Shown one piece after another: positions 791-51,156 of a stretch of 64,000 nucleotides of DNA. The position numbers and the translations under genes were made by a program. The notes under the pieces are model-generated. The model was not told where the DNA came from. It ran no database searches and worked only from the letters and a program-made list of their open reading frames with translations. Source of the DNA: Octopus sinensis (Eukaryota); NCBI RefSeq assembly GCF_006345805.1, contig NC_043004.1:71982001-72046000 (forward strand). The letters run 5' to 3'. Positions within the stretch are counted from its first letter, which is position 1. Each line of letters starts with the position of its first letter.

Positions 791-886
791 GGTCGTTCAA
801 ATAGCTATTTTGTCTTAATAACGTCCAATCACAGTAATTTCCCTTTGTATAACAGTAATTTTTCATAGCATTTATTCCGATGGCTA

Positions 887-947: not shown

Positions 948-1036
948 ATGGCTACCTAATAATTGTCACATATTACATTTACAGATATATAGATATATAT
1001 ATATATACATATATATATATGTAGGTATGTATTATG

Positions 1037-2787: not shown

Positions 2788-2821
2788 TACACACATATAT
2801 CTATATACGTTCCGATGGCTG

Positions 2822-2993
2822 GATAACTGAAGAGATGATGGCGTGGATTTCCATCCCGACATCCGAAACTCAGAATTTTATCTTGGCTACCGAATAATTG
2901 TCACATTATATTTACAGATACATCCTCTATTTACATAATATTGAGGTATCTTTCTTTCTTTTGTTATCTTACCATTTTATCAAGATATATATA

Positions 2994-3031
<38 letters not shown>

Positions 3032-3185
3032 TGATAAAATGGTAAGATAACAAAAGAAAGAAAGATACCTCAATATTATGTAAATAGAGGAATGTATCTG
3101 TAAATATAATGTGACAATTATTCGGTAGCCAAGATAAAATTCTGAGTTTCGGATGTCGGGGTGGAAATCCACGCCATCATCTCTT

Positions 3186-3187
<2 letters not shown>
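2822..3187. mobile_element. Palindrome of two family-A hammerhead elements around a (TA)n centre
   Basis: 2828-2984 is the reverse complement of 3029-3187 with about 2 differences. The left hammerhead (2822-2882) has an intact core; the right one (3187-3133, minus) lacks C3. Confidence 0.75.
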
Positions 3188-3269
<82 letters not shown>

Positions 3270-18213: not shown

Positions 18214-18346
18214 GGCATAGCGCAGTGGATAAGGCGTGGTTAATGCAGTGCAGTCACACAGATGTTCTGAGTTCAACCCCAGGCCAGTCACGAAGGTGAA
18301 TCACAAGACACCTGAAGGAGGCAACACTCGAAACGTAATGTAAGCA
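18214..18346 (+). mobile_element. tRNA-like Pol III head fused to a degenerate hammerhead
   Basis: A box TAGCGCAGTGG (18218-18228), B box GTTCAACCC (18271-18279), then GACAC-CTGAAG-GAG-GCAACA-CTC-GAAAC-GTA. Confidence 0.5.
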
Positions 18347-18358
18347 ATACGTTTCGAA

Positions 18359-18767
18359 GACGGCGAGCTGGCAGAAACGTTAGCACGCCAGACGAAATGC
18401 GTAGCCGTATTTCGTCTGCCCCTACGTTCTGAGTTCAAATTCCGCCGAGGTCGACTTTGCCTTTCATCCTTTCGGTGTCGATAAATTAAGTACCAGTTAC
18501 ACACTGGGGTCGACGGAATCGACTTAATACCTATGTCTGTCCTTGTTTGTCCCCTCTGTGTTTAGCCCCTTGTGGCTAATAAAGAAATAGGTATTTCGTC
18601 TGCCGTTACGTTCTGAGTTCAAATTCCACCGAGGTCAAATTTGCCTGTCATCCTTTCGGGGTGGATAAATTAAGTACCCACTGGGGTCGATCTAATCGAC
18701 TTAACCCCTTTTTCTGTCCTTGTTTGTCCCCTTTCTGTGTAGCCTCTTGTGGGCAATAATGAAATAA
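18359..18767 (+). mobile_element. tRNA-derived SINE with a duplicated body
   Basis: GGCGAGCTGGCAGAAACGTTAGC head, two GCCTTTCATCCTTTCGG..GTCGATAAATTAAGTACC bodies, and a 17-bp TSD GAAACGTAATGTAAGCA (18330-18346 / 18768-18784). Confidence 0.85.
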
Positions 18768-19324
18768 GAAACGTAATGTAAGCATTAGCAACAAAGACGA
18801 AGACACCAGTTCGGCTAAGACATAAAACTAAAATAGCTTAGAGAATAAGGCAGAGAAGATATACACAAATGAAAGAGCAGAGTTAGTAACACTAGTTATA
18901 CATTTGGTCATAGCTATTGAACTTGGATCATACTGAGGGAAACTAACGTTTGATATAATGTAAAAGAACGGTTTTGTAATGAAAACGCATCTACAGAAAG
19001 GCTGTTTTAAATTACTTTTTTTTTGTATTCCGTGATTGAATAAATGTTTGAAATGAGAGCTTTATCCTTATTGGTTGCAATACTTGTGGTCACTCGTTAT
19101 GGAAACAGTGCAAACTAGTGTGTTGTATTAATGATGTTTGTATATAAAATATAATGGTATAATAACGAAAAGGTGATGAAAAAATAAAACCATTCTGCGT
19201 GCTATGAGAGACACATCTATTTTATACTAAAAACTATGGTGAACTAAGCAGCACAGAGGTACATATTGTGGTAAAAAGTTAATACAAAAAGCTCAAAAAT
19301 AAATGTAAAACTTTATTTACTCAC

Positions 19325-19654
19325 TGTTTTCTGAGAGCGTAAAGAAAGATACACAGTCGCATTCAGTATTGGAATTATATTGGCAGTAGAACAATTTATA
19401 CATTTTGCATGGTCCATTACAATAGCTAAAATAGCCACACATGTCATTCATCTTACACCGTAATGCACATTCTCTGACGGACGTCGTATATTCGGTACGT
19501 ACAACTGGAAGACTCAAGCATTTTGACTCGGTTATTTTCCTAAAATGTTGCATGTCATTGTTTGCACCAGTTTTCAAAATCACGAGAAAAATAATTGTTA
19601 AAACTTGCTGAAGTCGACTGAGGATCATATGGTATTGATTTGACGTCTTCATTC
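19325..19654 (-). CDS. Gene A coding exon 1: signal peptide plus PAN/apple-like domain
   Basis: ttacag|GA ATG (19652)...AAC A|gtgagt, 330 bp; hydrophobic leader, then FRKITESKCLS...CALRC...CGYFSYCNGPC. Confidence 0.85.
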
Positions 19655-19749: not shown

Positions 19750-20430
19750 TTCAATAGAGACTACCAATATTATCTTATCGTTCTGTCAACGGCTGTTTAC
19801 AAACTGACGTCCGTTCTGATCCAGGCACTGCTAAAAACGCGAAGCTTTGTCCGTATCTTACCATATTTGCTTTCTTAGCACCGAGGCGTTATTTCAGTTC
19901 CTCCATTACCACTTTCAGGCCCTTTCCTTAAATATCATATTTCTTGTTCAGTGCCCTGTACTTTTGTTGGTTTTTAAGCTTCACCTCTTTTCGGTCTAAC
20001 ACAGAATTGGCCATCGAGAGCATATCTAACCCTGCCTGTATTCTTCTTTTCTACCTTGGTTGTTTTCTTTTATCACTCACATTATATTCCATTTTCTTGA
20101 CATCAACACCCACATTTTCTACTACAACAATACTTGCTGCCATGATCAAATTGTTTGTTTCTGTCATTGTTTTGTTTTTTCGTTCTAATATATTCCAGAA
20201 TTTCATTCACATTTTTCGTTTCTTGGTTGAATTTCCATCAATCAATCTTTTTTAGGTTGCAAATATTGTTGCTATCATTCTCCTGTAGCATTACCTTTAT
20301 TCTGTCGTAGATTGCTTTTTGCCCATCTATCATGTCACTATTAGTTTTATTGTCTTCTCCCAAACCATTTATATGTCTCTCATCGAGTAAGCTATCACTG
20401 TTCCTTTCCTGCGGTTCATTAGAGATTTCA
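19750..20430 (-). mobile_element. R4/Dong-like LINE N-terminal ORF fragment
   Basis: Minus translation ...VNEILEYIRT...GKGLKVVMEELK resembles the pre-RT region of this clade; stops present. Confidence 0.55.
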
Positions 20431-20439
20431 CCTCTGAAA

Positions 20440-21945
20440 ACAGAGAGGAAGTTGTCACAGATTTTGATCAAGAACAAGGATCACTTTACACCAATGACGT
20501 ACAGACAACTGGCTCAACACCACAGTAAACTACTACACATGTATGGTCTCCCTAAGATTCACAAGGATGGTATTCCATTAAGACCTATAGTGAGCTGTAA
20601 AGGTACAGTATGTCACCCACTGTGCTGCTTTCTTGTGGATATAATCAGTCCATTAGCAGGATAGTCAATATCGCACGTGAATAATTCCACCCACTTCACA
20701 GAATTGATCAAGGATACCCCCATTGAATCCAACCAGATGGTGAGTCTAGATGCGATAAGCCTGTTCACCAAAGTCCCAACTGGTAAAGCACTATCGGTGA
20801 TACGAACGAAAACTAGTGACAGACACCCATCTAAAAGAACAGACTAGTATACCAATAAGAAACTTGATGAAAATGTTGATATTCTGTGTAGAAACTACCT
20901 ACTTCTGTATGGACACTGATATATATCGACAAGAGGAGGGTTTAGCTATAGCTTCGCCATTATCGCCGGTAATAACCAATATATACATAGAACACTTTGC
21001 GAATTTGGCTTTAGAATCAACACCACTAAAACCAACCCTATGGCTACGATATGCTGATGACACCTTTATACTCTGGCCCCACCAGGAACAGATCCAAGTG
21101 CTGTTAGATCATGTGAAGTCAATGAAGCCTCCCATACAATTCACAATGGAAAAGGAAAAAGACAATCAATTAGCATTCCTGGACGTATCAAAAACACGCA
21201 CCAAGTATGGATTCAGGACATCCGTATACCTCAGGCCGACCTTCATGGACGATACCTCAACTTCAATTCCCACCATCCATACAGTGTAAAGAGAGGGGTT
21301 GCTCAGTGCCTAAAACATCGAGGAAAGAATATAAGTAGCGATCGTGATATATACCACGAAGAAATGGTCAAGCTCAATAACGATATGTTAAGCAACAACT
21401 ACCCCCAAAGTATACTATCCACTCTAATCAGGATAAAGAGAGAGGATGAGGCCGGAAAACTGTCCACAGTCTGTCTACCCTATGTGAAAGGCCTCTCCGA
21501 AAAGATACAAAAGATATGCGGCCTATGTGACATCAGGACAGTATTCAAGAGAAATACAACACTTCGCGAATATCTCCTTCGAGTAAAACCACCAACAGAA
21601 GAGAATATAACCAAAGACTGTGTGTACTACATCCCATGCAGTTGTGGTAGGTTATACAAAGGCGAAACATGCCTACCCCTCAAAATAAGGGTAGACGAAC
21701 ATCACAAAGCTGTGGCACGAGGAGATACTGATAAATCAGGTATAGCTGATCATGTATAGAAAATGGAGACCACTTCCCCCTGTGGGATGAAGTTAAAATA
21801 ATAGACAGAAAACACCACCAGAAAATACGAAAACTAAAAGAAGCAGCACATATGCTAGGACACAACAACCTCCTAAAGAGACCCAGTGAGGATGTGAACA
21901 GCATTTGGGAACCGGTATTAAGGATAGAAAAATATTTGATTAATA
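20440..21945 (+). mobile_element. Penelope-like element (RT + GIY-YIG), decayed
   Basis: YGLPKIHKDGIPLRPIVS, SLDAISLFTKVP, SPLSPVITNIY, WLRYADDTF, IQFTMEKE...LAFLDV, VYYIPCSCGRLYKGET; several stops and frameshifts. Confidence 0.92.
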
Positions 21946-32360: not shown

Positions 32361-34180
32361 CTCTTTTCTACGCTAGGCACAAGGACCGAAATTTTGGGGT
32401 ACTTAATTTACCGACTCCGAAAGAATGAAAGGCAAAGTCGACCTCGGCGAAATTTGAACTCAGAACGTAGCGGCAGACGAAATTCCTATTTCTTTACTAC
32501 CCACAAGGGGCTAAATACAGAAGAGACAAACAAGGACAGACAAACGGATTAAGTCGATTATATCGACTCCAGTGCGTAACTTGTACGTATTTAATCGAAC
32601 CCGAAAGGATGAAATGCAACGTCGACCTCGGCGGAAGTTGAACTCAGAACGTAAGACAGACGAAATGCCTATTTCTTTACTACACACAAGGGGCTAAATA
32701 CAGAAGAGACAAACAAGGACATACAAACGGATTAAGTCGATTATATCGACCCCAGTGCGTAACTTGTACGTATTTAATCGAACCCGAAAGGATGAAATGC
32801 AAAGTCGACCTCGGCGGAATTTGAACTCAGAACGTAAGACAGACGAAATGCCTATTTCTTTACTACACACAAGGGGCTAAATACAGAAGAGACAAACAAG
32901 GACAGACAAACGGATTAAGTCGATTATATCGACCCCAGTGCGTAACTGGTACGTATTTAATCGAACCCGAAAGGATGAAATGCAAAGTCGACCTCGGCGG
33001 AATTTGAACTCAGAACGTAAGACAGACGAAATGCCTATTTCTTTACTACCCACAAGGGGCTAAATACAGAAGAGACAAACAAGGACAGACAAACGGATTA
33101 AGTCGATTATATCGACCCCAGTGCGTAACTGGTACGTATTTAATCGAACCCGAAAGGATGAAATGCAAAGTCGACCTCGGCGGAATTTGAACTCAGAACG
33201 TAAGACAGACGAAATGCCTATTTCTTTACTACCCACAAGGGGCTAAATACAGAAGAGACAAACGAGGACACACAAACGGATTAAGTCGATTATATCGACC
33301 CCAGTGCGTAACTGGTACGTATTTAATCGAACCCGAAAGGATGAAATGCAAAGTCGACCTCGGCGGAATTTGAACTCAGAACGTAAGACAGACGAAATGC
33401 CTATTCTTTACTACCACAAGGGGCTAAATACAGAAGAGACAAACAAGGACAGACAAACGGATTAAGTCGATTATATCGACCCCAGTGCGTAACAAGTACG
33501 TATTTAATCGAACCCGAAAGGATGAATGCAAAGTCGACCTCGGCGGAATTTGAACTCAGAACGTAAGACAGACGAAATGCCTATTTCTTTACTACCCACA
33601 AGGGGCTAAATACAGAAGAGACAAACAAGGACAGACAAACGGATTAAGTCGATTATATCGACCCCAGTGCGTAACTGGTACGTATTTATCGAACCCGAAA
33701 GATGAAATGCAAAGTCGACCTCGGCGGAATTTGAACTCAGAACGTAAGACAGACGAAATGCCTATTTCTTTACTACCCACAAGGGGCTAAATACAGAAGA
33801 GACAAACGAGGACACACAAACGGATTAAGTCGATTATATCGACCCCAGTGCGTAACTGGTACGTATTTAATCGAACCCGAAAGGATGAAATGCAAAGTCG
33901 ACCTCGGCGGAATTTGAACTCAGAACGTAAGACAGACGAAATGCCTATTTCTTTACTACCCACAAGGGGCTAAATACAGAAGAGACAAACGAGGACACAC
34001 AAACGGATTAAGTCGATTATATCGACCCCAGTGCGTAACTGGTACGTATTTAATCGAACCCGAAAGGATGAAATGCAAAGTCGACCTCGGCGGAATTTGA
34101 ACTCAGAAAGTAACGGCAGACGAAATACGGCTACTCATTTCGCCCGGCGTACTAGCGTTTCAGCCAGCCCGCCTCCTTAG
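32361..34180 (-). mobile_element. SINE with about 10 tandem 183-bp internal units
   Basis: Unit starts (AAGTCGACC) at about 32435, 32619, 32802, 32985, 33168, 33351, 33531, 33712, 33895 and 34078; one head (~34110-34178), one tail (~32361-32400); 13-bp TSD ATCCATATTAATA (32348-32360 / 34181-34193). Confidence 0.9.
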
Positions 34181-34590: not shown

Positions 34591-35688
34591 TTTGCTACTC
34601 AGATAGTTCTAATATGGAAGTTTTCAGTCTTATCATCAGCTTCGTTACATAGTTTAACAATCGGCATTCACTTCTGTCCAAAAATATTCACAAATAAACC
34701 AATGAAAACAAACCAAGTCTTTATAACAAACAAATAAGGCGTCGAGCTGGCAGAACGTTAGCACACCGGGCGCAGATGCTAAGCGGTATTTCCTCTGTCG
34801 TTACGTTCTGAGTTCAAATTCCGCCGAGGTCGACATTGCCTTCTTTCTTACGGGGTTGATAAATTAAGTACTAGTTACGCACTAGGGTCGGTCTAATCCC
34901 TTTGTCTGTCCTTTTTTGTTCCCTCTATGCCCCTTGTGGGCAATAAAGAAATAAGAAAAGAAACCAAGTCTTTATACGTTGTTGACGAAAAGTATTTTCA
35001 GCTATTGTAGTATACTGGCGGCTTCACTTTGATTATTTCTATTTCAGATTTGGTAGATTTGTTTGTTAATGCCGTGGAAAAAGGTGCTGTACAGCCATAT
35101 AAAGTAGATTTAGATATTGATGAAATGAAGGAATGATTTGTTTTGTATTCTGGGAGGTGATTAATTCTGCTTATACTCATCAGTAGACATTCCACTTCTG
35201 TATTTGGAATTCTCCTACTCCTCTGAGATATTTTTATTCACTCTTAATTCAATTAAACTAATTTTAAAGTACTTTCCAATCGCTACGTTCCAGCATTTTC
35301 CTACTCCTTTGTTTTAAATTTCCCTAATTTTTCCCCTACAATTCTCAAATTTGCTAACAGATCTTACCAATATTTTGGATTTTCTCTTTACTTTTCAACT
35401 CTGGATCATTGATTCTTATTTATTTTATTTCCTAAGACGTATATATCTATTTTATTATTTTTTTTAATTAATAGGTCCCATGTTTATATTTTTGATACAC
35501 TTTTCCGTCATTCTACATACTATTCCAACAATTTTAATAATTCTTCAATCATCGCCTTTCGCGTTTTATTTTCGTCATATGCTTCCAGTATTAAGGTGCT
35601 TCACTCACATAAACCCTAGCTGCCAATCATAATTTCCAGACACAATATTACCTCCATTCCATTCAATTTTACAATTTCACTTCTCTCT

Positions 35689-35827: not shown

Positions 35828-37835
35828 TCATTAAGGAACAGTTAACGTCCAGCGAACAATAGTACGGATCATTGATCAATTTACAGTGAAATTGTATGAT
35901 AAGCAAAGTAGAAAAGAAAGTAAGCTCGTGGGTTTAAGAGAAGTAACAAGTGCGTAACTGGTACGTATTTAATCGAACCCGAAAGGATGAAATGCAAAGT
36001 CGACCTCGGCGGAATTTGAACTCAGAACGTAAGACAGACGAAATGCCTATTTCTTTACTACCCACAAGGGGCTAAATACAGAAGAGACAAACAAGGACAG
36101 ACAAACGGATTAAGTCGATTATATCGACCCCAGTGCGTAACTGGTAAGTATTTAATCGAACCCGAAAGGATGAAATGCAAAGTCGACCTCGGCGGAATTT
36201 GAACTCAGAAAGTAACGGCAGACGAAATACGGCTACTCATTTCGCCCGGCGTACTAACGTTTCAGCCAGCCCGCCTCCTTAGATCCATATTAATATTAAT
36301 TCACTTAACTTTCCAAGTAACCCTTAAATTTAATTGAGTTTCTAACATTTTCTTTTCCTTTTTTTTTCTTTTTTCCAGTATTGCTAAAAGTGTTTCCTTT
36401 ACCTTGGTCCTGACAATTAAAGATCAAAAATAAGAAACTCTCACAGATTTTGTGAAACAAGTTTTTTTTTTTTAAATATACTGGCTTCCAAAATAATGAT
36501 GTGTTGCTAACACGATGTCACCAAGTTTATTCCACCCTTGTGAAGTATGGTGATAGACTTGAATTTGCTTTACCAAAAATTCTTGAAATTATTGCCAAGT
36601 TATATCTGCTTCCTTAAGCAAATTCTACGCCTTGATGTCCTACTTTATTCCTTTATTTTATTTATTTATTTGCTACTCAGATAGTTCTAATGTGGAAGTT
36701 TCCAGTCTTATCATCAGCTTCGTTAGATAGTTTAACAATCGGCATTCACTTCTGTCCAAAAATATTCACAAATAAACCAATGAAAACAAACCAAGTCTTT
36801 ATAACAAACAAATAAGGCGTCGAGCAGATGCTAAGCGGTATTTCCTCTGCCGTTACGTTCTGAGTTCAAATTCCGCCGAGGTCGACATTGCCTTCTTTCT
36901 TACGGGGTCGATAAATTAAGTACTAGTTACGCACTAGGGTCGGTCTAATCCCTTTGTCTGTCCTTTTTTGTTCCCTCTATGCCCCTTGTCAGCAATAAAG
37001 AAATAAGAAAAAAAAACAAGTCTTTATACGTTGTTGACGAAAAGTATTCTCAGCTATTGTAGTATACCGGCGGCTTCACTTTGATTATTTCTATTTCAGA
37101 TTTGGTAGATTTGTTTGTTAATGCCGTGGAAAAGGTGTTGTACAGCCATATAAAGTAGATTTAGATATTGATGAAATGGAGGAATGATTTGTTTTGTATT
37201 CTGGGAGGTGATCAATTCTGCTTATACTCACCAGTAGACATTCCACTTTTGTATTTGGAATTCTCCTACTCCTCTGAGATATTTTTATTCACTCTTAATT
37301 CAATTAAACTAATTTTAAAGTACTTTCCAATCGCTACGTTCCAGCATTTTCCTACTCCTTTGTTTTAAATTTCCCTAATTTTTCCCCTACAATTCTCAAA
37401 TTTGCTAACAGATCATACCAATATTTTGGATTTTCTCTTTACTTTTCAACTCTGGATCATTGATTCTTATTTATTTTATTTCCTAAAACGTATATATCTA
37501 TTTTATTATTTTTTTTAATTAATAGGTCTCATGTTTATATTTTTGATACACTTTTCCGTCATTCTACATACTATTCCAACAATTTTAATAAATTCTTCAA
37601 TCATCGCCTTTCGCGTTTTAATTTTCGTCATATGCTTCCAGTAATAAGGTGCTTCACTCACATAAACCTTAGCTGCCAATCATAATTTCCAGACACAATA
37701 TTACCTCCATTCCATTCAATTTTACAATTTCACTTCTCTCTCTCATTCTCTCTCTCTCTCTCTCTCTCTGTCTGCCTCCCTCTCTCTCTCTCAGTATATA
37801 TATACATATATATATATATATACATATGTATGTAT

Positions 37836-40390: not shown

Positions 40391-40469
40391 AGACAAAGGA
40401 CATGCTGTCGCCATTCCAGCATAGAGGTAACTTCTATGCTGGAGTGGCGACAGCATGTTCTTTGACTAT
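40389..40469 (+). other. 71-81 nt near-perfect hairpin
   Basis: CAAAGGACATGCTGTCGCCATTCCAGCATAGA / TCTATGCTGGAGTGGCGACAGCATGTTCTTTG: 32 bp with two G-U pairs and a short loop. Confidence 0.8.
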
Positions 40470-40832
40470 CTCCTGAAATTCTTGGAGATTTTAAGTATAA
40501 TCATACTAATGTGTCCAACTGTTCTAATTTAATTAAATTCTATGTCTTTAAATTGATGTAATGATTGCATTGTTCAATTAAATGGCGTTGTATGAAACGA
40601 TCGTACTGGATTACCTCTGGATATCCTTGTTTTGATTTTAATCACCTTTGAAATTGTATGGATAATACCGTATTAATTTCTGGTGCCTCAAATTAAGTAC
40701 CATATTCATCTGAATGAAACATTTTGCTACACTCATCTACCATACCCAAAGTATATATATATATATATATTATATATATATATATATGCATGCATGTATG
40801 TATGTATATGTATGTATGTATATGTATGTATG

Positions 40833-40876
<44 letters not shown>

Positions 40877-41499
40877 CATGTATGTATATGTATATATATA
40901 TAAATACACACACATACACATCATACATGAACACATACATACCCAGATACACATATACACATACACGCACAGGTAACATTGTGCCGATACAAGTATATAC
41001 GTTAGGTGCATGGAGGTTTTCACGCACGTTTGATTTACATTTCAACAAAGTAATGAAAGCTATGAGATAAAACGTAATAATATTTATGGAAAGTTCTAGT
41101 CATTAGTTGGAATGTTTCCGTCCCATTGTTCGGTCGACTGATGACTGAATTAATCAGGTGATACTAGAAACCATTTCCCATGCATTATCATGTAGGCCAA
41201 TGATAATATGGGAGGAACATATTGAGAAAAAGAGGGAATCATACAAAATAAAATACCGGCAAACCAAAGGAAGAGAGAAGGCAAAAAAATGAAAAACAAA
41301 AAAGACAAGGAAGAACAAAATAATTGTATATATATAGACGCAGGCGTGGCTGTATGTTAAGAAGCTTGCGTCCCAACTACATGGTTCCGGGTTCAGTCAC
41401 ACTGCGTGGCACTTTGGGCAAGTGTCTCTATTGTAGCATCGGGCCGACCAAAGCCTTGTGAGTGGATTTGGTAGACAGAAGTTGCAAAAAAGCCCGTCG

Positions 41500-41554
<55 letters not shown>

Positions 41555-41589
41555 GTGTGTGTGTTTTTTCTCCCCACCATCGCTTGGCA

Positions 41590-41636
<47 letters not shown>

Positions 41637-41899
41637 AATTACCATTTTCGTTAGCAGTTTATGATATGATATTAAGCAACTTTGGTAATGAATGAATGCT
41701 TTTGAATATAAATTTGGCCGTTAGTAATAAATGAAAGTCCATGAAATGAGATCGCAATTGTTGTAGGCATGAGGGATACTATATCTTACTTGAAGCGTTT
41801 TGTATCATATACTTATTTTCTTGTTTTGCCTGACATAAGCGTATTGCAGCTTTTTTTCAATGAAAGTGATGTATGTTAAAGAAAAGCATACATTTATAA

Positions 41900-43915
41900 C
41901 AAACATACAAATTGAATAAAGGCAGGTACAAAAATACATGTCAGAGCATGCTTATGAGCGAAAAGCGTGCGTGAAGTAAGAATGGTCATTGAAGGTAACG
42001 TACTGTTAACAACAATCAGGAAATGAAACAAAATATGAAAGAAATGCTTGCAGGAAGTCTGATTACTAACGGTTACAGTTTGGCGTAGATGTGAAAATTG
42101 CAGTAGAGGAATAACTATGACAGGGCTGCTTTGTAGCATAGATGACGAAGTTGTCTGGATGGTCAACTCTGGAACAACCGACGTAGAACTGTCCATGTGA
42201 AGAAAAGCACACTTTCAAAGATCCAATCAGACAACTTTCGGCAATTGACATTGTGCTTTGTCAATTGTCATGGCAAAGCTGAATTTGAGAGAAATTGACA
42301 TCTCTGTATAGGATAGGAACAGTGTTTGTTGGGTTTAGCGGAAATTTCGAACGTTTTTGCCATGTCCCGTGATAATTTGGGCTGCAATGTCGTGGTCCAT
42401 CATTTGTTTGCTACAAGGCGAATTCCATTGCACAGTGTGGGTGCGCTTAGATTGTGTAGGAGGATGGTAGGGCAACCGACTTTTAAAAGAAGTCCATGAG
42501 CAGAGAGTGCTGCGGGGCTTGGGATTTGATAAATTCTGTTGGAAAGTGTGTAACCTGATCGAGGTCGGTAACGGTGTCAACTGTTCTGTTTGAGAGGGTA
42601 GCTGACTGAGTAAGTCGTACTTGAGAGTGTTGACAGCTGCCTTTTAGTTGCAAGAATAGGCCTGTCGCGAAACCAATCTGATTTTATGTATTCTGTTGTT
42701 AGATATGTGTAAACAGCAGAACATAAGTCTTCAGGGCTGGAGACAGTCTGGCCAATGATGGTAATGTCAATGTATCTGTTGTCGCCGGACGTAACTTGTC
42801 TATTGCCGATTTTAAGGAGCATTTCCGAAACTGGGTTGTAGACTGACCAGTCTGTATGAGTAATCTCATGTTGATGGTGAACTGTTTCGATCAAATATGC
42901 GACCAAAGGAGGGATTCCTTAAGGCAGGCATTAAGTTCATCAGCGGGTGTTTCTTTGAGTATAATAAGCAGAGTTTGTCGAAAATCTCCTTCAAGAGGTT
43001 GAGTCGCACCTCCAAGGATATTGTTGTTCGATCTAAGGTCTTTCATTGTGGTACCAAGTGTTTGTAGGGAACATTTATCGGACGTTGTTTCGTCATCCCA
43101 AAGAATGAGATTGCACTTTTTCGAAATTGTCGCTTCGTCCGAGGAATGCACTATGAGGCACGTTTGGTTTTCTTGATCTGCTACCTTGAAAGGAAATTTC
43201 AAGGTAGAGTGTGCCGTTCATCCGTCACCGAGAAGAGTCGGAGCTATTCCTGATGAGGCATCAACAATAGTAAGATCACTTTTATGCCGCAAATTCGCAA
43301 GAAGATTCAGGTGGAATATTTCTCCAGTTCCACCGAGTGCATCTAAGAAGATGATTCTGCTAGTGTGTGTGTAGATGTTTGCGAGGACAAAATTGTTCGG
43401 AATTTAGAAGGGTCTCGTTGTCAGCAGTGTACTGTTTGAGTTTGTGGATGTAATAGGATGTTTCTCTCAGAATGGGGCGACAGGAACTGGCGTTTTCATT
43501 TCCGTCCGGAATGTTGAGAGAACAAGCGTCCAATCATTGACCTCCAATTGCCATAACCAGGTTTTCCAAGAGAAGAAGCCTTACGTTTTAAATGGCAGGG
43601 GTAGTGAGAGTGTCTACGCTATTTGTTATTTGGCGAGTCTGCTGCCAAATATCATGGCACATTGCGTCTTTTATTTATTCCAAAGTGAATGTGCATCTGT
43701 CAAGTTGCAGAAAACCAGCATTATTTGCAAAAATGGGTTGGAGCTTGTGTGGAGAACGACACAAAGAGACCTCTTCGAATGCATTATCATTTTGATCATC
43801 TGTATCCAAAACTCGCACCTTTGAAAGTGCCGCAAAAGTGGCCGTCCACTATGCGAAGATCTTTGAAGGAGGTTGGTCTCTTAATGACATAAAGAGCTGA
43901 AGATGGAAGCATACG
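41900..43915 (-). mobile_element. Helitron Rep/PIF1-helicase pseudogene (duplicate ~47430-49435)
   Basis: KRPTSFKDLRIVDG, GGTG, SSGIA..LL..G.TAHSTLK, LILWDD, GDFRQTL, QIITGHGKN and FSHGQFYVGCSRV helicase motifs with frameshifts. Confidence 0.85.
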
Positions 43916-43924
43916 GAGTTCAAG

Positions 43925-44345
43925 GGGTGAACTGTCCGGCGACAACGGATACATTGACACTACCACCATTGGCCACACTGTCTCCAGCCCTGATGACTTA
44001 TGTTCTGTTGTTTACACATATCTTACAACGGGATACATAAAATCAGATTGGTTTCGCGACAGGCATATTCTTGCACCTAAAAGACAGCTGTCAACACTCT
44101 TAACTACGACTTACTCAATCCGCTACCCTCTCAAACAGAATAGTTGACAGCGTTATTGACCTCGATCGGGTTACACACTTTCCAACAAAATTTCTCAAAT
44201 CCTAAAATCCTTCAGGACTCCCTGCTCATGGACTTCTCTTAAAAGTAGGTTGCCCTATCATCCTTCTACGCAATATAAACGCACCCACACTGTACAATGG
44301 AACTCGCCTTGTGGCAAACAAATGATGGACCACGTCATTGAGGCC
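43925..44345 (+). mobile_element. Inverted partial copy of the Helitron helicase (duplicate ~49440-49865)
   Basis: Reverse-complement match to about 42390-42790 ([32 protein letters not shown]). Confidence 0.8.
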
Positions 44346-44367
44346 ATTTTGTGTTTGTGTGTGTCTC

Positions 44368-44692
44368 TAATTTTACACGCTAGAAGAAGCAGTCGGTTAG
44401 ACACTATCCATCTACTGCCGACTGAAACTGCGCTTGCGCGGTGGATTTTGAAAAGTTATAACATATAATGATGAGCTCGTGTTATTCGTCTCTAAGTTAT
44501 ATTTTAGTTGTTAAGGCACGGTTACTGATGAGGATCCGCTAAGTAAATTATTTTATTTGCTAAAGAAATCTGAAACCTAGGTATAACCGCAAAAAAAACA
44601 AGGTAAAAGTTTATATTTTTCATTCTTTTCGAAACTTACTCTTAAATGTAGTTTTGGTCGTTTTGACTGCTTCTTCTAGCGTCTAAAAATTA
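44368..44692 (+). mobile_element. 325-bp element bounded by inverted repeats and containing a hammerhead (copy at ~49890-50223)
   Basis: Perfect 18-bp inverted repeat ACGCTAGAAGAAGCAGTC (44377-44394) / GACTGCTTCTTCTAGCGT (44665-44682), extendable to about 27 bp. Confidence 0.7.
44519..44589 (+). ncRNA. Type I hammerhead ribozyme with intact core (family B)
   Basis: CGGTTA-CTGATGA-GGAT...ATCT-GAAA-C-CTAG-GT-A-TAACCG. 6-bp stem I, stem II GGAT/ATCT (closing G-U) with an inner AGTAAAT/ATTTGCT hairpin, palindromic stem III ACCTAGGT, GUA cleavage after 44583. Confidence 0.85.
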
Positions 44693-44872
44693 CCTGTTAA
44701 AGGTAGTTTTTTCTTGTGTTTAAATGTACACTATTTTATATTGAGAATATGTTGTCTATTGACTTTTTATACATGCCAGGCCACTGGTGGTGACATTTCT
44801 AAGAATATTCGTTACTCCATATATATATTACGTATATATATATATATATATATATGCTTGTATATCTTTCAG

Positions 44873-45202
44873 GAATGCTACATTCATCTGATGACCATAT
44901 CTTTCTTAAATTGACGGTAGGCTTTACACTTCTAATTTTCGGCGCTCCGATAACTGGGCGAGCAGAATATAAAGAAAGTTATTTCAAAAGACTTACTAAA
45001 TCAAAATGCTTATCTGACAAAAATGAAATAACCGAGAAGACGGTATCTGGTGCCCAATGTGGACTTCTGTGTACAGCACATGCTCAGTGTGGATATTTTA
45101 GCTATTGTAATGGCGCCTGTCATTTGCATCGACCCTTTTACAGCGAAGAACTTGAAGATTATACTTGCAACAGTTCATTGTATATTTTGCTGAATGAAAA
45201 CG
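44873..45202 (+). CDS. Gene B coding exon 1, copy a: signal peptide plus PAN/apple-like domain
   Basis: ctttcag|GA ATG (44875)...AAC G|gtatgt, 330 bp; FKRLTKSKCLS...CGLLC...CGYFSYCNGAC; same length and phase as gene A exon 1. Confidence 0.8.
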
Positions 45203-45405
45203 GTATGTAAATCGCAACTTCCCTCTGTGTCTCTGTAATTTTATATATATGCATATACGTATAAATGTGTGTGTCTGTGTGTGTGTGAATACATATATGT
45301 ATGTATCTACATACATAAATGCACACATACTAATTAATTTTTAGGAAATTACTATTTTTAAATCTCACAACGTGAAAAATTCAGCAACAGTACTTTGTAT
45401 TAAAC

Positions 45406-45548
45406 ATTATTTGCCAACATAACATGGCAGTCCTGGGTTAGGACTAATGATCGTGTCGTATAGCCAGCTGGAGACGATGACTCCTGGGGCTAAATTACAG
45501 CAACATTTAGTCCTAAACCAAGACTGCCATGTTATGTTGGCAAACAAT
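45406..45548. mobile_element. 143-bp MITE-like hairpin with ~44-bp arms
   Basis: ATTATTTGCCAACATAACATGGCAGTCC... / ...GACTGCCATGTTATGTTGGCAAACAAT; collapsed to 44 bp in the duplicate (50947-50990). Confidence 0.75.
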
Positions 45549-45706
45549 CTTTACTAATTAACTTATTTTATTAAAATTATATACAATTTATATATATATA
45601 TATATATATACATATACATACATAAATACTCACATACCAATTACTTCTTGTATTAAAATTATATTCAAAATTATATATATACACACACATATACATATAT
45701 ATATAA

Positions 45707-45923: not shown

Positions 45924-46257
45924 AACTTCTATGCTGGAGTGGCGACAGCAGTGTTCTTTGACTATCTCCTGAATTCTTCTTGGAGATTTTAAGTATAATC
46001 ATAGCTAATGTGTCCAACTGTTTCTAATTTATTAAATGCTATGTCTTTAAATTGATGTAATGATTGCATTGTTCAATAAATGGCGTTTGTATGAAACGAT
46101 CGTACTGGATTACCTTCGGGATATCCTTGTTTTGATTTTAATCACCTTTGAAATTGGTATGGATAACTACCGTTTAATTTCTTGCTGGTGCCTCAAATTA
46201 AGTACCATATTCATCTGAATGAAACATTTTGCTACACTCATCTACCATAACCCAAAG

Positions 46258-46290
<33 letters not shown>

Positions 46291-46991
46291 GCATGCATGG
46301 TATTATGATATGTATGTATGTATATGTAATATATATATATATTACTTATATATATACAATACATGTATGTATATGTATATATATATAAATACACACACAT
46401 ACACATCATACATGAACACATACATACCCAGATACACATATACACATACACGCACAGGAACATTGTGCCGATACAAGTTATACGTTAGGGCATGGAGGTT
46501 TTCACGCACGTTTTGATTTACATTTCACAAGTAATGAAAGCTATGAGATAAAACGTAATAATATTTATGGAAAGTTCTAGTCATTAGTTGGAATGTTTCC
46601 GTCCCTTGTTCGGTCGACTGATGACTGAATTAATCAGGTGATACTAGAAACCATTTCCCATGCATTACATGTAGGCCAATGGATAATAGGAGGAACATAT
46701 TGAGAAAAAGAGGGAATCATACAAAATAAAATACCGCAAACCAAAGGAAGAGAGAAGGCAAAAAATGAAAACAAAAAAGACAAGGAAGAACAAAAATAAT
46801 TGTATATATATATAGACCAGGCGTGGCTGTATGTTAACAAGCTTGCGTCCCAACTACATGGTTCCGGGTTCAGTCACACTGCGTGGCACTTTGGGCAAGT
46901 GTCTCTATTGTAGCATCGGGCCGACCAAAGCCTTGTGAGTGGATTTGTTAGAAGAAGTTTGCAAAAAAGCCCGTCGTATATATATGTATCG

Positions 46992-47047
<56 letters not shown>

Positions 47048-47114
47048 TATTATATATATATATATATATATATGTTGTTTGTGGTTTTTCTCCCCCACCA
47101 TCGCTTGGCAACCG

Positions 47115-47181
<67 letters not shown>

Positions 47182-50048
47182 TACCATTTTCGTTAGCAGT
47201 TTCTGATTGATATTAAGCAACTTTGGTAATGAATAATGCTTTTGAATATAAATTTGGCCGTTAGTAATAAATGAAAGTCCATGAATGAGATCGCAATTGT
47301 TGTAGGCATCAGGGATACTATATCTTACTTGAAGCGTTTTGTATCATATACTTATTTTTTCTTGTTTTGCCTGACATAAGCGTATTGCAGCTTTTTTTTC
47401 AATGAAATGATGTATGTTAAAGAAAAGCATACATTTATAACAAACATACAAATTGATAAAGGCAGGTACAAAAATACATGTCGAGCATACTTATGAGCGA
47501 AAAGTGTGCGTGAAGTAAGAATGGTCATTGAAGGTAACGTACTGTTAACAACAATCAGAGAAAAAACAAATATGAAAGATGCTTGCAGGAAGTCTGATTA
47601 CTAACGGTTACAGTTTGGCGTAGATGTGAAAATTGGCAGTAGAGAATTACTAGAATGACAGCTGCTTTGTAGCATAGATGACGAAGTTGTCTGGATGGTC
47701 ACTCTGGAACAGACCGCAGAAATGTCAATGTGAAGAAAAAGCACACTTTCGAAGATCCAATCAGACACTTTCGGCAATTGACATTGTGCTTTGTCAATTG
47801 TCATGGGCAAAGCTGAATTTGAGAGAAATTGACATCTCTGCATAGGATAGGAACAGTGTTTGTTGGGTTTAGCGGAAATTTCGAACGTTTTTTGCCATTC
47901 CCGTGATAATTTGGGCTGCAATGTCGTGGTCCATCATTTGTTTGCTACAGGCGAATCCATTGCACAGTGTGGGTGCGCTTAGATTGTTGTAGGGAGATGG
48001 TAGGGGCAAACGACTTTTAAAAGAAGTCCATGAGCAGAGAGTGCGGGGGGGCTTGGATTTGATAAATTCTGTTGGAAATTGTGTAACCTGATCGAGGTCG
48101 GTAACGGTGTCACTGTTCTGTTTGATAGGGTAGCTGACTGAGTAAGTCGTACTTGAGAGTGTTGACAGCTGCCTTTTTAGTTGCAAGAATAGGCCTGTCG
48201 CGAAACCAAATCTGATTTTATGTATTCTGTGTTAGATAGGTGTAAACAGCCGAACATAAGTCATCAGGCTGGAGACAGTCTGGCCAATGTGGTAATGTCA
48301 ATGTATCTTGTGTTTCGCCGGACGTAAATGTCTATTGCCGATTTTAAGACATTTCCGAAACTGGGTTGTAGACTGACCAGTCTGTATGAGTAATCTCATG
48401 TTGATGGTGAACTGTTTCGATCAAATATTGCGACCAAAGGAGGGATCCTTAAGGCAGGGCATTAAGTTCATCCGCGGTGTTTCTTCTTTGAGTATATAAA
48501 GCAGAGTTTGTCAAAAATCTCCTTCAAGAGGTTGAGTCGCACCTCCAGGAATTGTTGTTCGATCTAGGTCTTTCATTGTGGTACCAAGTGTTTTGTAGGG
48601 ACATTTATCGGACGTTGTTTCGTCATCCCAAGAATGAGATTGCACTTTTTCGAAATTGTCGCTTCGTCCGAGGAATGCACTATGAGGCACGTTTGGTTTT
48701 CTTAATCTGCTACCTTGAAAGGAAATTTGAAGTAGAGTGTGCCGTTCATCCGTCACCGAGAAGAGTCGGAGCTATTCCTGATGAGGCATCAACAATAGTA
48801 AGATCACTTTTATGCCGCAATTTCGCAAGAAGATTCAGGTGGAATATTTCTCCAGTTCCACCGAGTGCATCTAAGATGATTCTACTAGTGTGTGTGTAGA
48901 TGTTTGCGAGGACAAAATTGTTCGGAATTTAGAAGGGTCTCGTTGTCAGCAGTGTACTGTTTGAGTTTGTGGATGTAATAGGATGTTTCTCTCAGAATGG
49001 GGCGACTGGAACTGGCGTTTTCATTTCTGTCCAGAATGTTGAGAGAAAAAGCGTCCAATCGTTGACCTCCCATTGCCATAACCAGGTTTTCCAAGAGAAG
49101 AAGCCTTACGTTTTAAATGGCAGGGGTAGTGAGAGTGTCTACGCTATTTGTTATTTGGCGAGTCTGCTGCCAAATATAATCACACATTGCGTCTTTTATT
49201 TATTCCAAAGTGAATGTGCATCTGTCAAGTTGCAGAAAACCAGCATTATTTGCAAAAATGGGTTGGAGCTTGTGTGGAGAACGACACAAACAGACCTCTT
49301 CGAATGCATTATCATTTTGATAATCTGTATCCAAAACTCGCACCTTTGAAAGTGCCGCAAAAGTGCCGTCCACTATGCGAAGATCTTTGAAGGAGGTTGG
49401 TCTCTTAATGACATAAAGAGCTGAAGATGGAAGCATACGGAGTTCAAGGGGTGAACTGTCCTGGCGACAACGGATACATTGACACTACCACCATTGGCCA
49501 CATTGTCTCCAGCCCTGATGACTTATTTCTGTTGTTTACACAATCTTACAACGGGATACATAAATCAGATTGGTTTCGCGACAGGCATATTCTTGCACCT
49601 AAAAGACAGCTGTCAACACTCTTAACTACGACTTACTCAATCCGCTACCCTCTCAAACAGAATAGTTTACAGCGTTATTGACCTCGATCGGGTTACACAC
49701 TTTCCAACAAAATTTCTCAAATCCTAAAATCCTTCAGGACTCCCTGCTCATGGACTTCTCTTAAAAGTAGGTTGCCCTATCATCCTTCTACGCAATATAA
49801 ACGCACCCACACTGTACAATGGAACTCGCCTTGTGGCAAACAAATGATGGACCACGTCATTGAGGCCATTTTGTGTTTGTGTGTGTCTCTAATTTTACAC
49901 GCTAGAAGAAGCAGTCGGTTAGACATTATCCATCTACTGCCGACTGAAACTGCGCTTGCGCGGTGGATTTTGAAAAATTATAACATATAATGATGAGCTC
50001 GTGTTATTCGTCTATATTTTAGCTCGTTATATTTTAGTTGTTAAGGCA

Positions 50049-50119
50049 CGGTTACTGATGAGGATCCGCTAAGTAAATTATTTTATTTGCTAAAGAAATC
50101 TGAAACCTAGGTATAACCG
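50049..50119 (+). ncRNA. Type I hammerhead ribozyme (identical duplicate of 44519-44589)
   Basis: Sequence identical to 44519-44589. Confidence 0.85.
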
Positions 50120-50360
50120 CAAAAAAAAACAAGGTAAAAGTTTATATTTTTCATTCTTTTCGAAACTTGCTCTTAAATGTAGTTTTGGTCGTTTTGACTG
50201 CTTCTTCTAGCGTCTAAAAATTACCTGTTAAAGGTAGTTTTTTCTTGTGTTTAAATGTGCACTATTTATATTGAGAATATGTTGTCTATTGACTTTTTAT
50301 ACATGCCAGGCCACTGGTGGTGACATTCTAAGAATATTCGTTACTCCATATATATATTAC

Positions 50361-50398
<38 letters not shown>

Positions 50399-50413
50399 TT
50401 GTATATCTTTCAG

Positions 50414-50743
50414 GAATGCTACATTCATCTGATGACCATATCTTTCTTAAATTGACGGTAGGCTTTACACTTCTAATTTTCGGCGCTCCGATAACTGGGC
50501 GAGCAGAATATAAAGAAAGTGATTTCAAAAGACTTACTAAATCAAAATGCTTATCTGACAAAAATGAAATAACCGAGAAGACGGCATCTGGTGCCCAATG
50601 TGGACTTCTGTGTACAGCACATGCTCAGTGTGGATATTTTAGCTATTGTAATGGCGCCTGTCATTTGCATCGACCCTTTTACAGCGAAGAACTTGAAGAT
50701 TATACTTGCAACAGTTCATTGTATATTTTGCTGAATGAAAACG
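50414..50743 (+). CDS. Gene B coding exon 1, copy b
   Basis: ATG at 50416; differs from copy a by Y36D and V57A; splice sites intact. Confidence 0.8.
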
Positions 50744-51156
50744 GTATGTAAATCGCAACTTCCCTCTGTGTCTCTGTAATTTTATATATATGCATATACC
50801 TATAAATGTGTGTGTGTGTGTGTGTGTGAATACATATATGTATGTATCTACATACATAAATGCACACATACTAATTAATTTTTAGGAAATTACTATTTTT
50901 AAATCTCACAACGTGAGAAATTCAGCAACAGTACTTTGTATTAAACATTGTTTGCCAACATAACATGGCAGTCCTGGGTTGGCAAACAATCTTTACTAAT
51001 TAACTTATTTTATTAAAATTATATACAATTTATATATATATATATATTATATATATATAATACATACATAAATACTCACATACTAATTACTCTTGTATTA
51101 AAATTATATTCAAAATTATATATATATACACACATATACATATATATATATATATG

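What the first reader, a model, noticed from the sequence alone, without database searches (positions are those of the whole stretch)
44368..44692. Intact hammerhead in an inverted-repeat-bounded mini-element, sense to and just upstream of gene B's ATG exon
This is the best ribozyme here: full core, 6-bp stem I, GUA site and the perfect palindrome ACCTAGGT as stem III (4-nt loop as a monomer, 8 bp as a dimer). It ends about 280 bp before the splice acceptor of the ATG exon, so it probably lies in the 5' intron of the pre-mRNA, where cleavage could affect expression. If the duplication is real, two copies in one transcript could form the dimer. Terminal inverted repeats around a hammerhead fit neither a standard MITE nor a standard retrozyme. 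The left part (CTAGAAGA...AGTCGG/CCGACT-GAAAC-TGCGC/GCGCG-GT) may be a second, dead ribozyme.
Basis: partly seen in the sequence, partly recalled or inferred. Interest (0 to 1): 0.85.

Follow-up and report, generated by a model that had tools for sequence, protein, structure and literature searches.

The report
Lone hammerhead ribozyme repeat relic
A real but atypical hammerhead ribozyme motif sits at the tip of a 325-base hairpin-like unit upstream of a gene; it is most likely a single leftover copy of the ribozyme-carrying mobile repeats already known in invertebrate genomes, not a new kind of gene switch.

Summary
The sequence features are real. At 44519-44589 (+) there is a type I hammerhead: core CUGAUGA...GAAA, 6-bp helix I, GUA site (cut after A44583) and the 8-nt palindrome ACCUAGGU as helix III. 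Shuffled windows give 0.007 such matches. Two other hammerhead families with the same build lie in the window; shuffles give none. The 27/28-nt inverted termini (44368-44394 / 44665-44692) are confirmed.

- The second copy (50049-50119) comes from a 5.2-kb segmental duplication with identical flanks, not from transposition.
- I found no other copy in the window or in any searchable collection, no empty site and no convincing target-site duplication.
- Rfam's hammerhead models do not match. Helix II is 40 nt and closes with a G·U pair instead of the conserved G10.1-C11.1.

One new result: the unit folds into a 56-bp rod. Its inner 33 pairs form only as RNA on the ribozyme strand (9 G·U; z -4.5 versus -1.15 on the other strand).

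Best reading (confidence 0.5): a solitary relic of an RNA-propagated hammerhead element of the metazoan retrozyme / Penelope-pLTR kind. It needs a partner copy to cut, so it is probably silent here. A MITE is the main rival. The 5'-intron and regulatory idea cannot be tested here.

The parts
44368..44394 (+). Left terminal inverted repeat arm (TAATTTTACACGCTAGAAGAAGCAGTC). It contains the core-like string CTAGAAGA (44380-44387).
   Evidence: 24 nt, 96%; extension to 27/28 nt read
44665..44692 (+). Right terminal inverted repeat arm (GACTGCTTCTTCTAGCGTCTAAAAATTA).
44395..44455 (+). Left inner arm of the rod. It holds the local hairpin AGUCGG (44391-44396) / CCGACU (44418-44423), then GAAAC (44424-44428), then the GC hairpin UGCGC-UU-GCGCG (44429-44440).
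44625..44664 (+). Right inner arm of the rod. It pairs with the left inner arm only as + strand RNA: 33 pairs, 9 of them G·U.
44519..44589 (+). Type I hammerhead motif: helix I 44519-24 / 44584-89; core 44525-31 and 44572-74; helix II 44532-71; palindromic helix III 44575-82; predicted cut after A44583.
44508..44601 (+). Hammerhead with a possible loop 1 and closing stem (UUGUU 44508-12 / AACAA 44597-601).
   Evidence: read; not tested further
49890..50223 (+). Second copy of the unit (334 bp; hammerhead 50049-50119 identical). It was produced by the segmental duplication 40429-45705 / 45924-51150.
44349..44356 (.). TTGTGTTT, repeated directly at 44714-44721. A weak candidate target-site duplication for a slightly larger insert (44357-44713).
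   Evidence: P about 0.035-0.056
44875..45204 (+). First coding exon of 'gene B' (signal peptide plus a Cys-rich PAN/apple-like stretch). It is preceded by UUUCAG|GA and followed by GUAUGU.

Best explanation
The 325-bp unit is a solitary relic of a short, non-coding hammerhead element that was propagated or shaped as RNA. It belongs to the kind known in animals as non-LTR retrozymes, or as derivatives of the pseudo-LTRs of Penelope-like elements (PLEs).

Shown:
- On the + strand, about 90 nt at each end pair into a 56-bp rod.
- A type I hammerhead sits at the apical end of that rod, and its cleavage site lies at the junction with the 3' arm.
- Helix III is only an 8-nt palindrome.

Inferred:
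- The ribozyme can complete its active fold only by pairing with a second copy (a double hammerhead), as in tandem retrozyme arrays and newt or Schistosoma repeats.
- As a single unit it should cleave poorly or not at all.
- In the rod conformation the ribozyme's 3' strand is sequestered.
- The unit was made or selected as + strand RNA and inserted by a reverse transcriptase supplied in trans, most likely by a PLE.
- It has no demonstrated role for the neighbouring gene.

The second copy 5.5 kb downstream arose later, when the whole 5.2-kb segment including the gene's first coding exon was duplicated.
For: - The motif is not chance: 0.0067 equally strict matches per shuffled window. Three independent families with the same build (helix II of 30-40 nt, palindromic helix III of 8-10 nt) occur in 64 kb, against 0 in 200 shuffles.
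- Size (325 bp), GC (34%) and a type I motif with a short palindromic helix III match published retrozyme units. Dispersed monomers are common (PMC7229834; preprint; PMC4209133).
- The whole unit folds to -88 kcal/mol, z -4.7.
- With the outer 27 nt excluded, the inner arms form a -32.8 kcal/mol duplex on the + strand (z -4.5; 1 of 2000 shuffles as good). The - strand gives only -17.0 (z -1.15).
- At DNA level the inner arms are not significantly alike. They become so only when G·U on the + strand is allowed (z 4.1 versus 1.1).
- The MFE rod has 9 G·U among its 33 inner pairs and none among the 23 outer pairs.
- Other inverted repeats in the window differ symmetrically and mostly by transversions.
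- The genome hosts PLEs: a decayed RT plus GIY-YIG element lies at 20430-21921.
- PLE inserts are characteristically bounded by inverted repeats and favour microsatellite targets. The left flank here is (TG)n-like.
- Dimer energetics fit.
Against: - Only one independent locus exists. There is no other copy in the window, in IMG/VR or in JGI metagenomes. A six-frame pseudo-peptide search of 5.8 billion proteins found nothing.
- There is no tandem array here.
- The unit shows no similarity to the one PLE remnant in the window.
- No empty site could be found, and the candidate 8-bp TSD is weak.
- The sharp contrast between the near-perfect outer 27 nt and the roughly 65% identical inner arms fits a DNA transposon's terminal repeats better than one inverted retro-copy.
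- Rfam's Hammerhead_1 does not score it, although it scores a compact relative at 21.4 bits in a related genome.
- The conserved G10.1-C11.1 pair is G·U here.
- The strand asymmetry rests on about 11 positions at a single locus.
Confidence: 0.5

Rival explanations
1. A miniature inverted-repeat DNA transposon (MITE), for example Tc1/mariner-mobilised with a TA target duplication, that happens to carry or derive from a hammerhead-bearing sequence. The termini would be transposase binding sites and the ribozyme a passenger.
For: - 27/28-nt terminal inverted repeats flush with TA on both sides.
- 325 bp, AT-rich, non-coding.
- The outer arms are far better conserved than the inner arms, as expected for transposase-bound ends.
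- Another MITE-like palindrome lies nearby at 45398-45556.
Against: - TA is itself part of the palindromic extension, so it cannot be told apart from the repeat. No other TSD abuts the termini.
- There is no second independent copy.
- The inner-arm pairing is specific to the ribozyme strand, which DNA-level transposition does not predict.
- A full-text search found no paper describing a hammerhead-bearing MITE.
Confidence: 0.2
2. One reading: the hammerhead lies in a 5' intron of gene B's pre-mRNA and modulates expression by self-cleavage, possibly by dimerising with the duplicated copy.
For: - Same strand as the exon and 283 bp upstream of it.
- The exon is real: a paralogue at 19652-19323 aligns over all 110 residues and shares YAG|GAAUG, which is compatible with an upstream non-coding exon.
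- The copy at 50049 lies downstream of the first copy of the exon, so it could be intronic if that exon is used.
Against: - No upstream exon, transcription start site or transcript data are available.
- The exon peptide has no homologue in the protein database.
- Retrozyme monomers are depleted from introns in the one genome studied.
- A single dimer-type motif is expected to cleave poorly (PMC4209133).
- Identity of the two hammerhead copies carries no information: 15% of 71-nt windows in the duplication are identical.
Confidence: 0.08
3. A long-hairpin RNA locus (a source of small RNAs) or a purely local inverted duplication, in which the hammerhead is an incidental relic and plays no part.
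For: A 56-bp rod with G·U pairs only on one strand is also what hairpin-RNA genes look like. It is a single locus.
Against: The hammerhead at the apex is itself non-random and belongs to a class found three times in this window. No small-RNA data are available.
Confidence: 0.1
4. Chance match to the hammerhead descriptor inside an unrelated inverted repeat.
For: - No Rfam hit.
- The hammerhead stretch alone does not fold better than shuffles (z -0.22).
- At 0.0067 per 64 kb, a gigabase genome would hold hundreds of chance matches.
Against: - The 8-nt perfect palindrome falls exactly at helix III.
- Two further families share the same unusual architecture, against 0 of 200 shuffles.
- A plausible loop 1 and closing stem are present.
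Confidence: 0.04

Closest known systems
Metazoan non-LTR retrozymes (Cervera & de la Pena 2020, PMC7229834; Li, Clavereau & Pollet 2026 preprint 10.64898/2026.07.22.740005)
   Same: - Type I hammerhead with a short palindromic helix III that works through dimers.
- Unit of about 170-400 bp (family means of 313-342 bp in insects, corals and amphibians).
- Low GC and no coding capacity.
- Strongly self-paired RNA.
- Dispersed monomers exist beside arrays.
   Different: - No tandem array here and no family census.
- Flush 27-nt inverted termini are not a described feature.
- Helix II is 40 nt instead of about 4 bp plus a loop.
- G·U at 10.1/11.1.
Pseudo-LTRs of Penelope-like elements and their hammerheads (PMC4209133, PMC3846280, PMC8557442, PMC11167929)
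   Same: - Hammerhead on the element's sense strand near an end.
- Inserts bounded by inverted repeats.
- Microsatellite-rich targets and variable or absent TSDs.
- pLTRs alone suffice for mobilisation in trans.
- A PLE remnant lies in the same window.
   Different: - No sequence similarity to that PLE remnant.
- The inverted part is only 27 nt at high identity.
- PLE 'min' hammerheads usually keep G10.1-C11.1 with one unpaired base after A9, which this motif does not reproduce.
Classical double-hammerhead repeats: newt satellite 2 (about 330 bp), Schistosoma Sm-alpha (about 335 bp, SINE-like), cave-cricket pDo500 (from own knowledge and as cited in PMC4209133, PMC2837043)
   Same: Unit length of about 330 bp, type I topology and helix III too short for a monomer.
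   Different: - Those are high-copy tandem or SINE families with compact helix II, and Rfam's RF00163 recognises them.
- Rfam's tRNA model found no tRNA-like head in the left arm.
- A related genome does show a tRNA-like SINE head followed by a compact hammerhead (L002).
MITEs (Stowaway / Tc1-mariner type)
   Same: Terminal inverted repeats, TA at both ends, about 300 bp, AT-rich, hairpin-forming.
   Different: They are not known to carry ribozymes, are multi-copy by definition (untested here), and give no reason for strand-specific G·U pairing.
Intronic and UTR hammerheads of amniotes (HH9/HH10; discontinuous Clec2 3'-UTR hammerhead)
   Same: A hammerhead in sense orientation within or beside a protein-coding transcription unit, with proposed cis-regulation.
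   Different: Those are monomer-competent, conserved across species at orthologous sites, and matched by Rfam models. None of this is shown here.

Membership tests
Hammerhead ribozyme, type I | Conserved core C3 U4 G5 A6 N7 G8 A9 ... G12 A13 A14 | tested here: met
   CUGAUGA 44525-31 and GAA 44572-74
Hammerhead ribozyme, type I | Three helices around the core with helix I open (5' and 3' ends in helix I) | tested here: met
   Helix I 6 bp; helix II 4 bp plus inner 7 bp; helix III palindrome
Hammerhead ribozyme, type I | A15.1-U16.1 pair and a non-G nucleotide at position 17 | tested here: met
   A44575 / U44582, with A44583 at the GUA site
Hammerhead ribozyme, type I | G10.1-C11.1 pair closing helix II (highly conserved; PMC4209133) | tested here: not met
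   G44532 faces U44571, a wobble pair. The G-C pair one step in leaves an extra U before G12.
Hammerhead ribozyme, type I | Match to Rfam covariance models (RF00163 and clan CL00010) | tested here: not met
   No hit at gathering score, nor at E<=10 on 1.4 kb or 111 nt. Positive control: a compact motif in L002 scores 21.4 bits, E 0.003.
Hammerhead ribozyme, type I | Site-specific self-cleavage | not testable with these tools
   Needs in vitro transcription of monomer and dimer constructs
Metazoan non-LTR retrozyme | Short (about 170-400 bp), low-GC, non-coding unit carrying a type I hammerhead with a short palindromic helix III | tested here: met
   325 bp, 34% GC, no ORF longer than 33 aa lying wholly inside the unit
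Metazoan non-LTR retrozyme | Head-to-tail tandem repeats of the unit | tested here: not met
   Single unit. The second copy is 5.5 kb away inside a segmental duplication. Monomer derivatives are known.
Metazoan non-LTR retrozyme | Multi-copy family in the genome; expressed as circular RNA | not testable with these tools
   The source genome and its transcriptome are not in any searchable collection
PLE pseudo-LTR derivative | Sequence homology to the terminus of an autonomous Penelope-like element | tested here: inconclusive
   No similarity to the single decayed PLE in the window. Other PLE families of the genome cannot be examined.
PLE pseudo-LTR derivative | Direct and/or inverted repeat arrangement at the insert ends; microsatellite target; variable TSD | tested here: inconclusive
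   Inverted termini present; (TG)n-like left flank; 8-bp direct repeat with P 0.035-0.056
MITE | Terminal inverted repeats | tested here: met
   24 nt at 96%; 27/28 nt by eye
MITE | Target-site duplication of fixed length abutting the termini | tested here: inconclusive
   TA on both sides cannot be distinguished from the palindromic repeat. No longer direct repeat abuts the ends.
MITE | Many dispersed copies sharing both termini | tested here: not met
   None in 64 kb apart from the segmental duplicate.

The most novel reading that the evidence does not exclude
The unit represents an undescribed class of hammerhead element: a rod-shaped, viroid-like RNA whose genomic copies end in flush inverted termini. 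That would make it either a ribozyme-bearing MITE or a retrozyme that integrates as a single hairpin unit. The roughly 50-bp inner rod would be maintained by selection, or by RNA editing fixed through reverse transcription, on the ribozyme strand only. Hammerheads in this genome would share a variant build: helix II of 30-40 nt and a non-G-C 10.1/11.1 junction.
Probability: 0.12. Interest if true: 0.6.

Novelty: new member of a known kind. Interest (0 to 1): 0.3.

Why it matters
If the best reading holds, this is one more fossil of the hammerhead-bearing repeats that litter many invertebrate genomes. It matters mainly for annotation. It should be masked as a repeat and not read as a regulatory ribozyme of the neighbouring gene.

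Two points deserve a follow-up if the genome is available:
- All three hammerhead families in this window have an unusually long helix II that Rfam's models miss. Standard scans would therefore undercount ribozymes in this lineage.
- The strand-specific G·U rod is a cheap sequence-only signature of RNA-level history. It could help separate RNA-propagated from DNA-propagated short repeats.

Tried and rejected
- **Rfam.** No hammerhead hit in the whole window at gathering score, in 43800-45200, or in 44500-44610 at E<=10. Rfam's tRNA model found no tRNA-like head in 44360-44480, and ARAGORN found no tRNA in the window. I therefore dropped the idea of a tRNA-derived SINE head, which rested on the D-loop-like CAGTCGGTTAGA.
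- **Census outside the window.**
  - A gapped hammerhead pattern found nothing in IMG/VR.
  - The same pattern found nothing in JGI metagenomes.
  - A looser pattern gave three bacterial chance hits without helix I.
  - Exact look-ups of ORFs in or across the unit found nothing, and the same for other window ORFs.
  - A concatenated six-frame pseudo-peptide of the unit, used as a proxy DNA search, found nothing at E<=10.
- **Related genome.** PLE RT relatives (about 70% identity) come from ENA assembly ERZ21867824. About 96 kb fetched around five of them holds no copy of the unit. The source organism could not be named.
- **Empty site.** The decayed Helitron-type helicase fragment at 43934-44340 stops at 44340, while its inverted twin at 42385-42790 reads on as helicase. 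Nothing resumes after 44692. The paralogous gene at 19.3-19.7 kb is too diverged upstream to compare.
- **Constraint between the two copies.** The hammerhead is identical in both, but so are 15% of all 71-nt windows in the duplication. This is uninformative.
- **Homology between the three hammerhead families.** MAFFT alignments were not meaningful. A shared UUUAUUUG(G)CUAA in helix II of families 1 and 3 may be chance.
- **Gene B.** The exon peptide has no homologue in the protein database.

Full report
**1. What is in the sequence**

Reading 44000-45300 confirms every base-level statement of the finding. On the + strand:
- CGGUUA (44519-24) and UAACCG (44584-89) form a 6-bp helix I.
- The core is CUGAUGA (44525-31) and GAA (44572-74).
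- A15.1 to U16.1 is the perfect palindrome ACCUAGGU (44575-82), followed by A44583. The predicted cut is therefore between 44583 and 44584.
- Helix II is unusually long at 40 nt: GGAU/AUCU at the base, a 6x6 internal loop, then the 7-bp hairpin AGUAAAU/AUUUGCU.
- UUGUU (44508-12) and AACAA (44597-601) could close an internal 'loop 1' beyond helix I.

My own descriptor finds this site and an identical one at 50049-50119, and nothing else at that stringency.

**2. Is it more than chance?**

- Dinucleotide shuffles of the window give 0.047 relaxed and 0.0067 equally strict matches per window.
- A slightly more tolerant descriptor allows one bulge at either end of helix II. It reveals two further, unrelated hammerhead-like families:
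  - Family 2 at 884-950 (+): CUGAAGA, helix II of 31 nt, helix III ACUCGGAGU.
  - Family 3 at 1285-1351 and 1851-1917 (-): CUGACGA, helix II of 30 nt, helix III the 10-nt palindrome ACGUUAACGU.
- When an 8-11-nt palindromic helix III is required, the window has five sites in three independent families. 200 shuffles give none.

The motif is therefore real, and it belongs to a class typical of this genome.

**3. How 'intact' is it?**

- The core, A15.1-U16.1 and the GUA site are intact.
- The pair next to the core is G44532·U44571 rather than the conserved G10.1-C11.1, which is listed as a hallmark even of minimal PLE hammerheads (PMC4209133).
- None of Rfam's hammerhead models matches: not at gathering score on the whole window, nor at E<=10 on 1.4 kb or 111 nt.
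- As a control, a compact hammerhead found in a related genome (L002 20256-20302) scores 21.4 bits, E 0.003, against RF00163, which is still below the gathering score of 34. The other two families in the window also fail.
- The failure is best explained by the 30-40-nt helix II, but formally this membership test is not met.
- Energetically, a monomeric 2-bp helix III is destabilising (-8.1 versus -9.0 kcal/mol without it). The intermolecular 8-bp ACCUAGGU duplex is worth -11.4 kcal/mol and forms in the dimer MFE.

It matches what is known for metazoan type I hammerheads (PMC4209133).

**4. The duplication**

A self-comparison shows 40429-45439 matching 45924-50980 at 94.5% identity, continuing as 45536-45705 with 50978-51150. 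The two units have identical flanks on both sides.
- The two copies are therefore one insertion that was later duplicated along with the gene's first coding exon. They say nothing about mobility.
- Substitution divergence is 3.2% over the segment and about 1% locally.
- The hammerhead is identical in both copies, but 15% of all 71-nt windows are too. There is no evidence of constraint.

**5. The inverted repeat and the rod**

- The repeat finder reports 24-nt arms at 96%. By eye they extend to 27/28 nt, starting at TA on both sides.
- Folding the whole unit gives -88 kcal/mol (z -4.7) on the + strand and -72.6 (z -3.7) on the - strand. The second copy gives -91.5 (z -5.6).
- The MFE is a rod of 56 arm-to-arm pairs, from 44371·44688 to 44455·44625. 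The outer 23 pairs have no G·U. The inner 33 include 9 G·U.
- At DNA level the inner arms are not significantly similar (score equal to the shuffle mean). They become similar only if G·U on the + strand is allowed (z 4.1). Allowing G·U on the - strand gives z 1.1.
- With the outer 27 nt excluded, the RNA duplex of the inner arms is -32.8 kcal/mol on the + strand (z -4.5; 1 of 2000 shuffles as good). On the - strand it is -17.0 (z -1.15; 260 of 2000).
- Four other inverted repeats in the window differ symmetrically and mainly by transversions, as does the segmental duplication (67 transitions to 95 transversions).

The strand-specific, transition-only pattern points to selection for an RNA structure. 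Alternatively it points to editing of a double-stranded RNA later fixed by reverse transcription. Either way it acts on the strand that carries the ribozyme. This is the main new observation. It rests on one locus and roughly eleven positions.

**6. Is it a mobile element, and of what kind?**

- No other copy of the unit or its termini occurs in the window.
- No empty site could be reconstructed. The decayed Helitron-type helicase fragment at 43934-44340 simply ends at 44340, whereas its inverted twin at 42385-42790 reads on as helicase. Nothing resumes after 44692. The paralogous gene is too diverged upstream to compare.
- No TSD abuts the termini, other than a TA that is itself palindromic.
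- An 8-bp direct repeat, TTGTGTTT, lies 11 bp outside the left end and 21 bp outside the right end. It has P 0.035-0.056.
- All outside searches failed. The source species seems absent from the collections.
- The ends of the 'element' are therefore defined only by the inverted repeat.

**7. Context from the literature**

- Animal type I hammerheads with short palindromic helix III reside in non-LTR retrozymes: units of about 170-400 bp, low GC, tandem but also many dispersed monomers (PMC7229834; preprint 10.64898/2026.07.22.740005).
- They also reside in the pseudo-LTRs of Penelope-like elements (PMC4209133).
- PLE inserts are typically bounded by inverted repeats, often sit in microsatellites and have variable or no TSDs. 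Their pLTRs alone can be mobilised in trans (PMC3846280; PMC8557442).
- A purified PLE protein cleaves and extends both DNA strands in vitro (PMC11167929).
- Dual hammerheads 100-700 bp apart on opposite strands, and many solitary motifs, were already reported.
- The window itself holds a decayed PLE (RT plus GIY-YIG, 20430-21921). It has relatives at about 70% identity in ENA assembly ERZ21867824.
- Family 2 hammerhead units form an inverted pair around a (TA)n tract at 2795-3220.

A hammerhead inside an inverted-repeat-bounded short unit is therefore within the known repertoire, though the flush 27-nt termini are not a described feature. A full-text search found no paper describing a hammerhead-bearing MITE.

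**8. The neighbouring gene**

- The exon at 44875-45204 encodes a signal-peptide-like start and a Cys-rich PAN/apple-like stretch.
- It has no homologue in the protein database.
- It is duplicated at 50416-50745. It also has a 34%-identical paralogue at 19652-19323 (-) that aligns over all 110 residues and ends at the same point.
- Both share YAG|GAAUG just before the start codon. This is modest support for a real acceptor, and hence for an upstream non-coding exon.
- Where that exon or the promoter lies cannot be determined here.

The claim that the ribozyme is intronic, and any effect on expression, remain untested.

**9. Verdict**

The ribozyme motif, its dimer dependence, the inverted termini and the duplication hold. 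The mobility inference from two copies, the 'dead second ribozyme' and the regulatory role do not hold or cannot be judged.
- The most likely explanation (0.5) is a solitary relic of an RNA-propagated hammerhead element of the retrozyme / PLE-pLTR kind, probably inactive as a single unit.
- A hammerhead-bearing MITE (0.2) is the main rival.
- Novelty is that of a new member of a known kind. There is a small chance (about 0.12) that it represents an undescribed terminal-inverted-repeat, rod-shaped variant.

Noticed in passing
window 40429-45705 and 45924-51150: Tandem segmental duplication of about 5.2 kb (94.5% identity with indels; 3.2% substitutions). It includes decayed Helitron-like fragments, the hammerhead unit and the first coding exon of gene B. 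It could be real or a haplotype mis-assembly.
   Followed up: partly
window 884-950 (+); degenerate copies 2815-2900 (+) and about 3115-3195 (-): Second hammerhead family (CUGAAGA, helix II of 31 nt, helix III ACUCGGAGU, GUU site). Two decayed units form an inverted pair around a (TA)n tract, flanked by (GA)n and (GATA)n, at 2795-3220.
   Followed up: partly
window 1285-1351 (-) and 1851-1917 (-): Third hammerhead family (CUGACGA, helix II of 30 nt, 10-nt palindrome ACGUUAACGU as helix III). It sits inside a roughly 400-bp unit duplicated in tandem (1092-1488 and 1658-2054, 97.7%) and bordered by (TA)n.
   Followed up: partly
window 20430-21921 (+): Decayed Penelope-like element (reverse transcriptase 20816-21289, GIY-YIG endonuclease 21364-21759, frameshifts). 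It is about 70% identical in DNA to copies in ENA assembly ERZ21867824. No hammerhead was detected next to it.
   Followed up: partly
window 19323-19652 (-): Paralogue of gene B's first coding exon (34% identity over 110 residues; shared CGYFSYCNG motif and a shared YAG|GAATG start context). This points to a small local gene family of secreted PAN/apple-like proteins with no database homologues.
   Followed up: partly
window 42385-42790 (-) and 43934-44340 (+): Two inverted copies (89.7%) of a decayed Pif1/Helitron-type helicase fragment. One reads on as helicase, the other is truncated 28 bp before the hammerhead unit.
   Followed up: partly
window 45398-45556: MITE-like palindrome (50-nt arms, 90% complementary, 59-nt spacer) at the edge of the segmental duplication. 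The second copy of the duplication seems to hold only one arm.
   Followed up: no
window 32398-34126, with related pieces at 18346-18766, 35949-36228 and 34735-34953: Array of about 9.5 tandem copies of a 183-bp unit (95-97% identity), with dispersed relatives. The unit contains a tRNA T-arm-like stretch (GGCGGAAGTTGAACTCAGAAC) and may be a SINE-derived satellite.
   Followed up: no
window 56740-57570: Almost perfect 831-bp palindrome (arms of 224 and 188 nt at 100%), centred near 57155 inside LINE-type reverse-transcriptase ORFs. Either a head-to-head inverted LINE duplication or an assembly artefact.
   Followed up: no
L002 20256-20302 (-), with context 20200-20520: In the related genome (ERZ21867824), a compact type I hammerhead (RF00163, 21.4 bits) directly follows tRNA-like A/B-box sequence and is followed by (TA)n(GA)n(GATT)n. 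It looks like a tRNA-derived SINE carrying a hammerhead, like Schistosoma Sm-alpha.
   Followed up: partly
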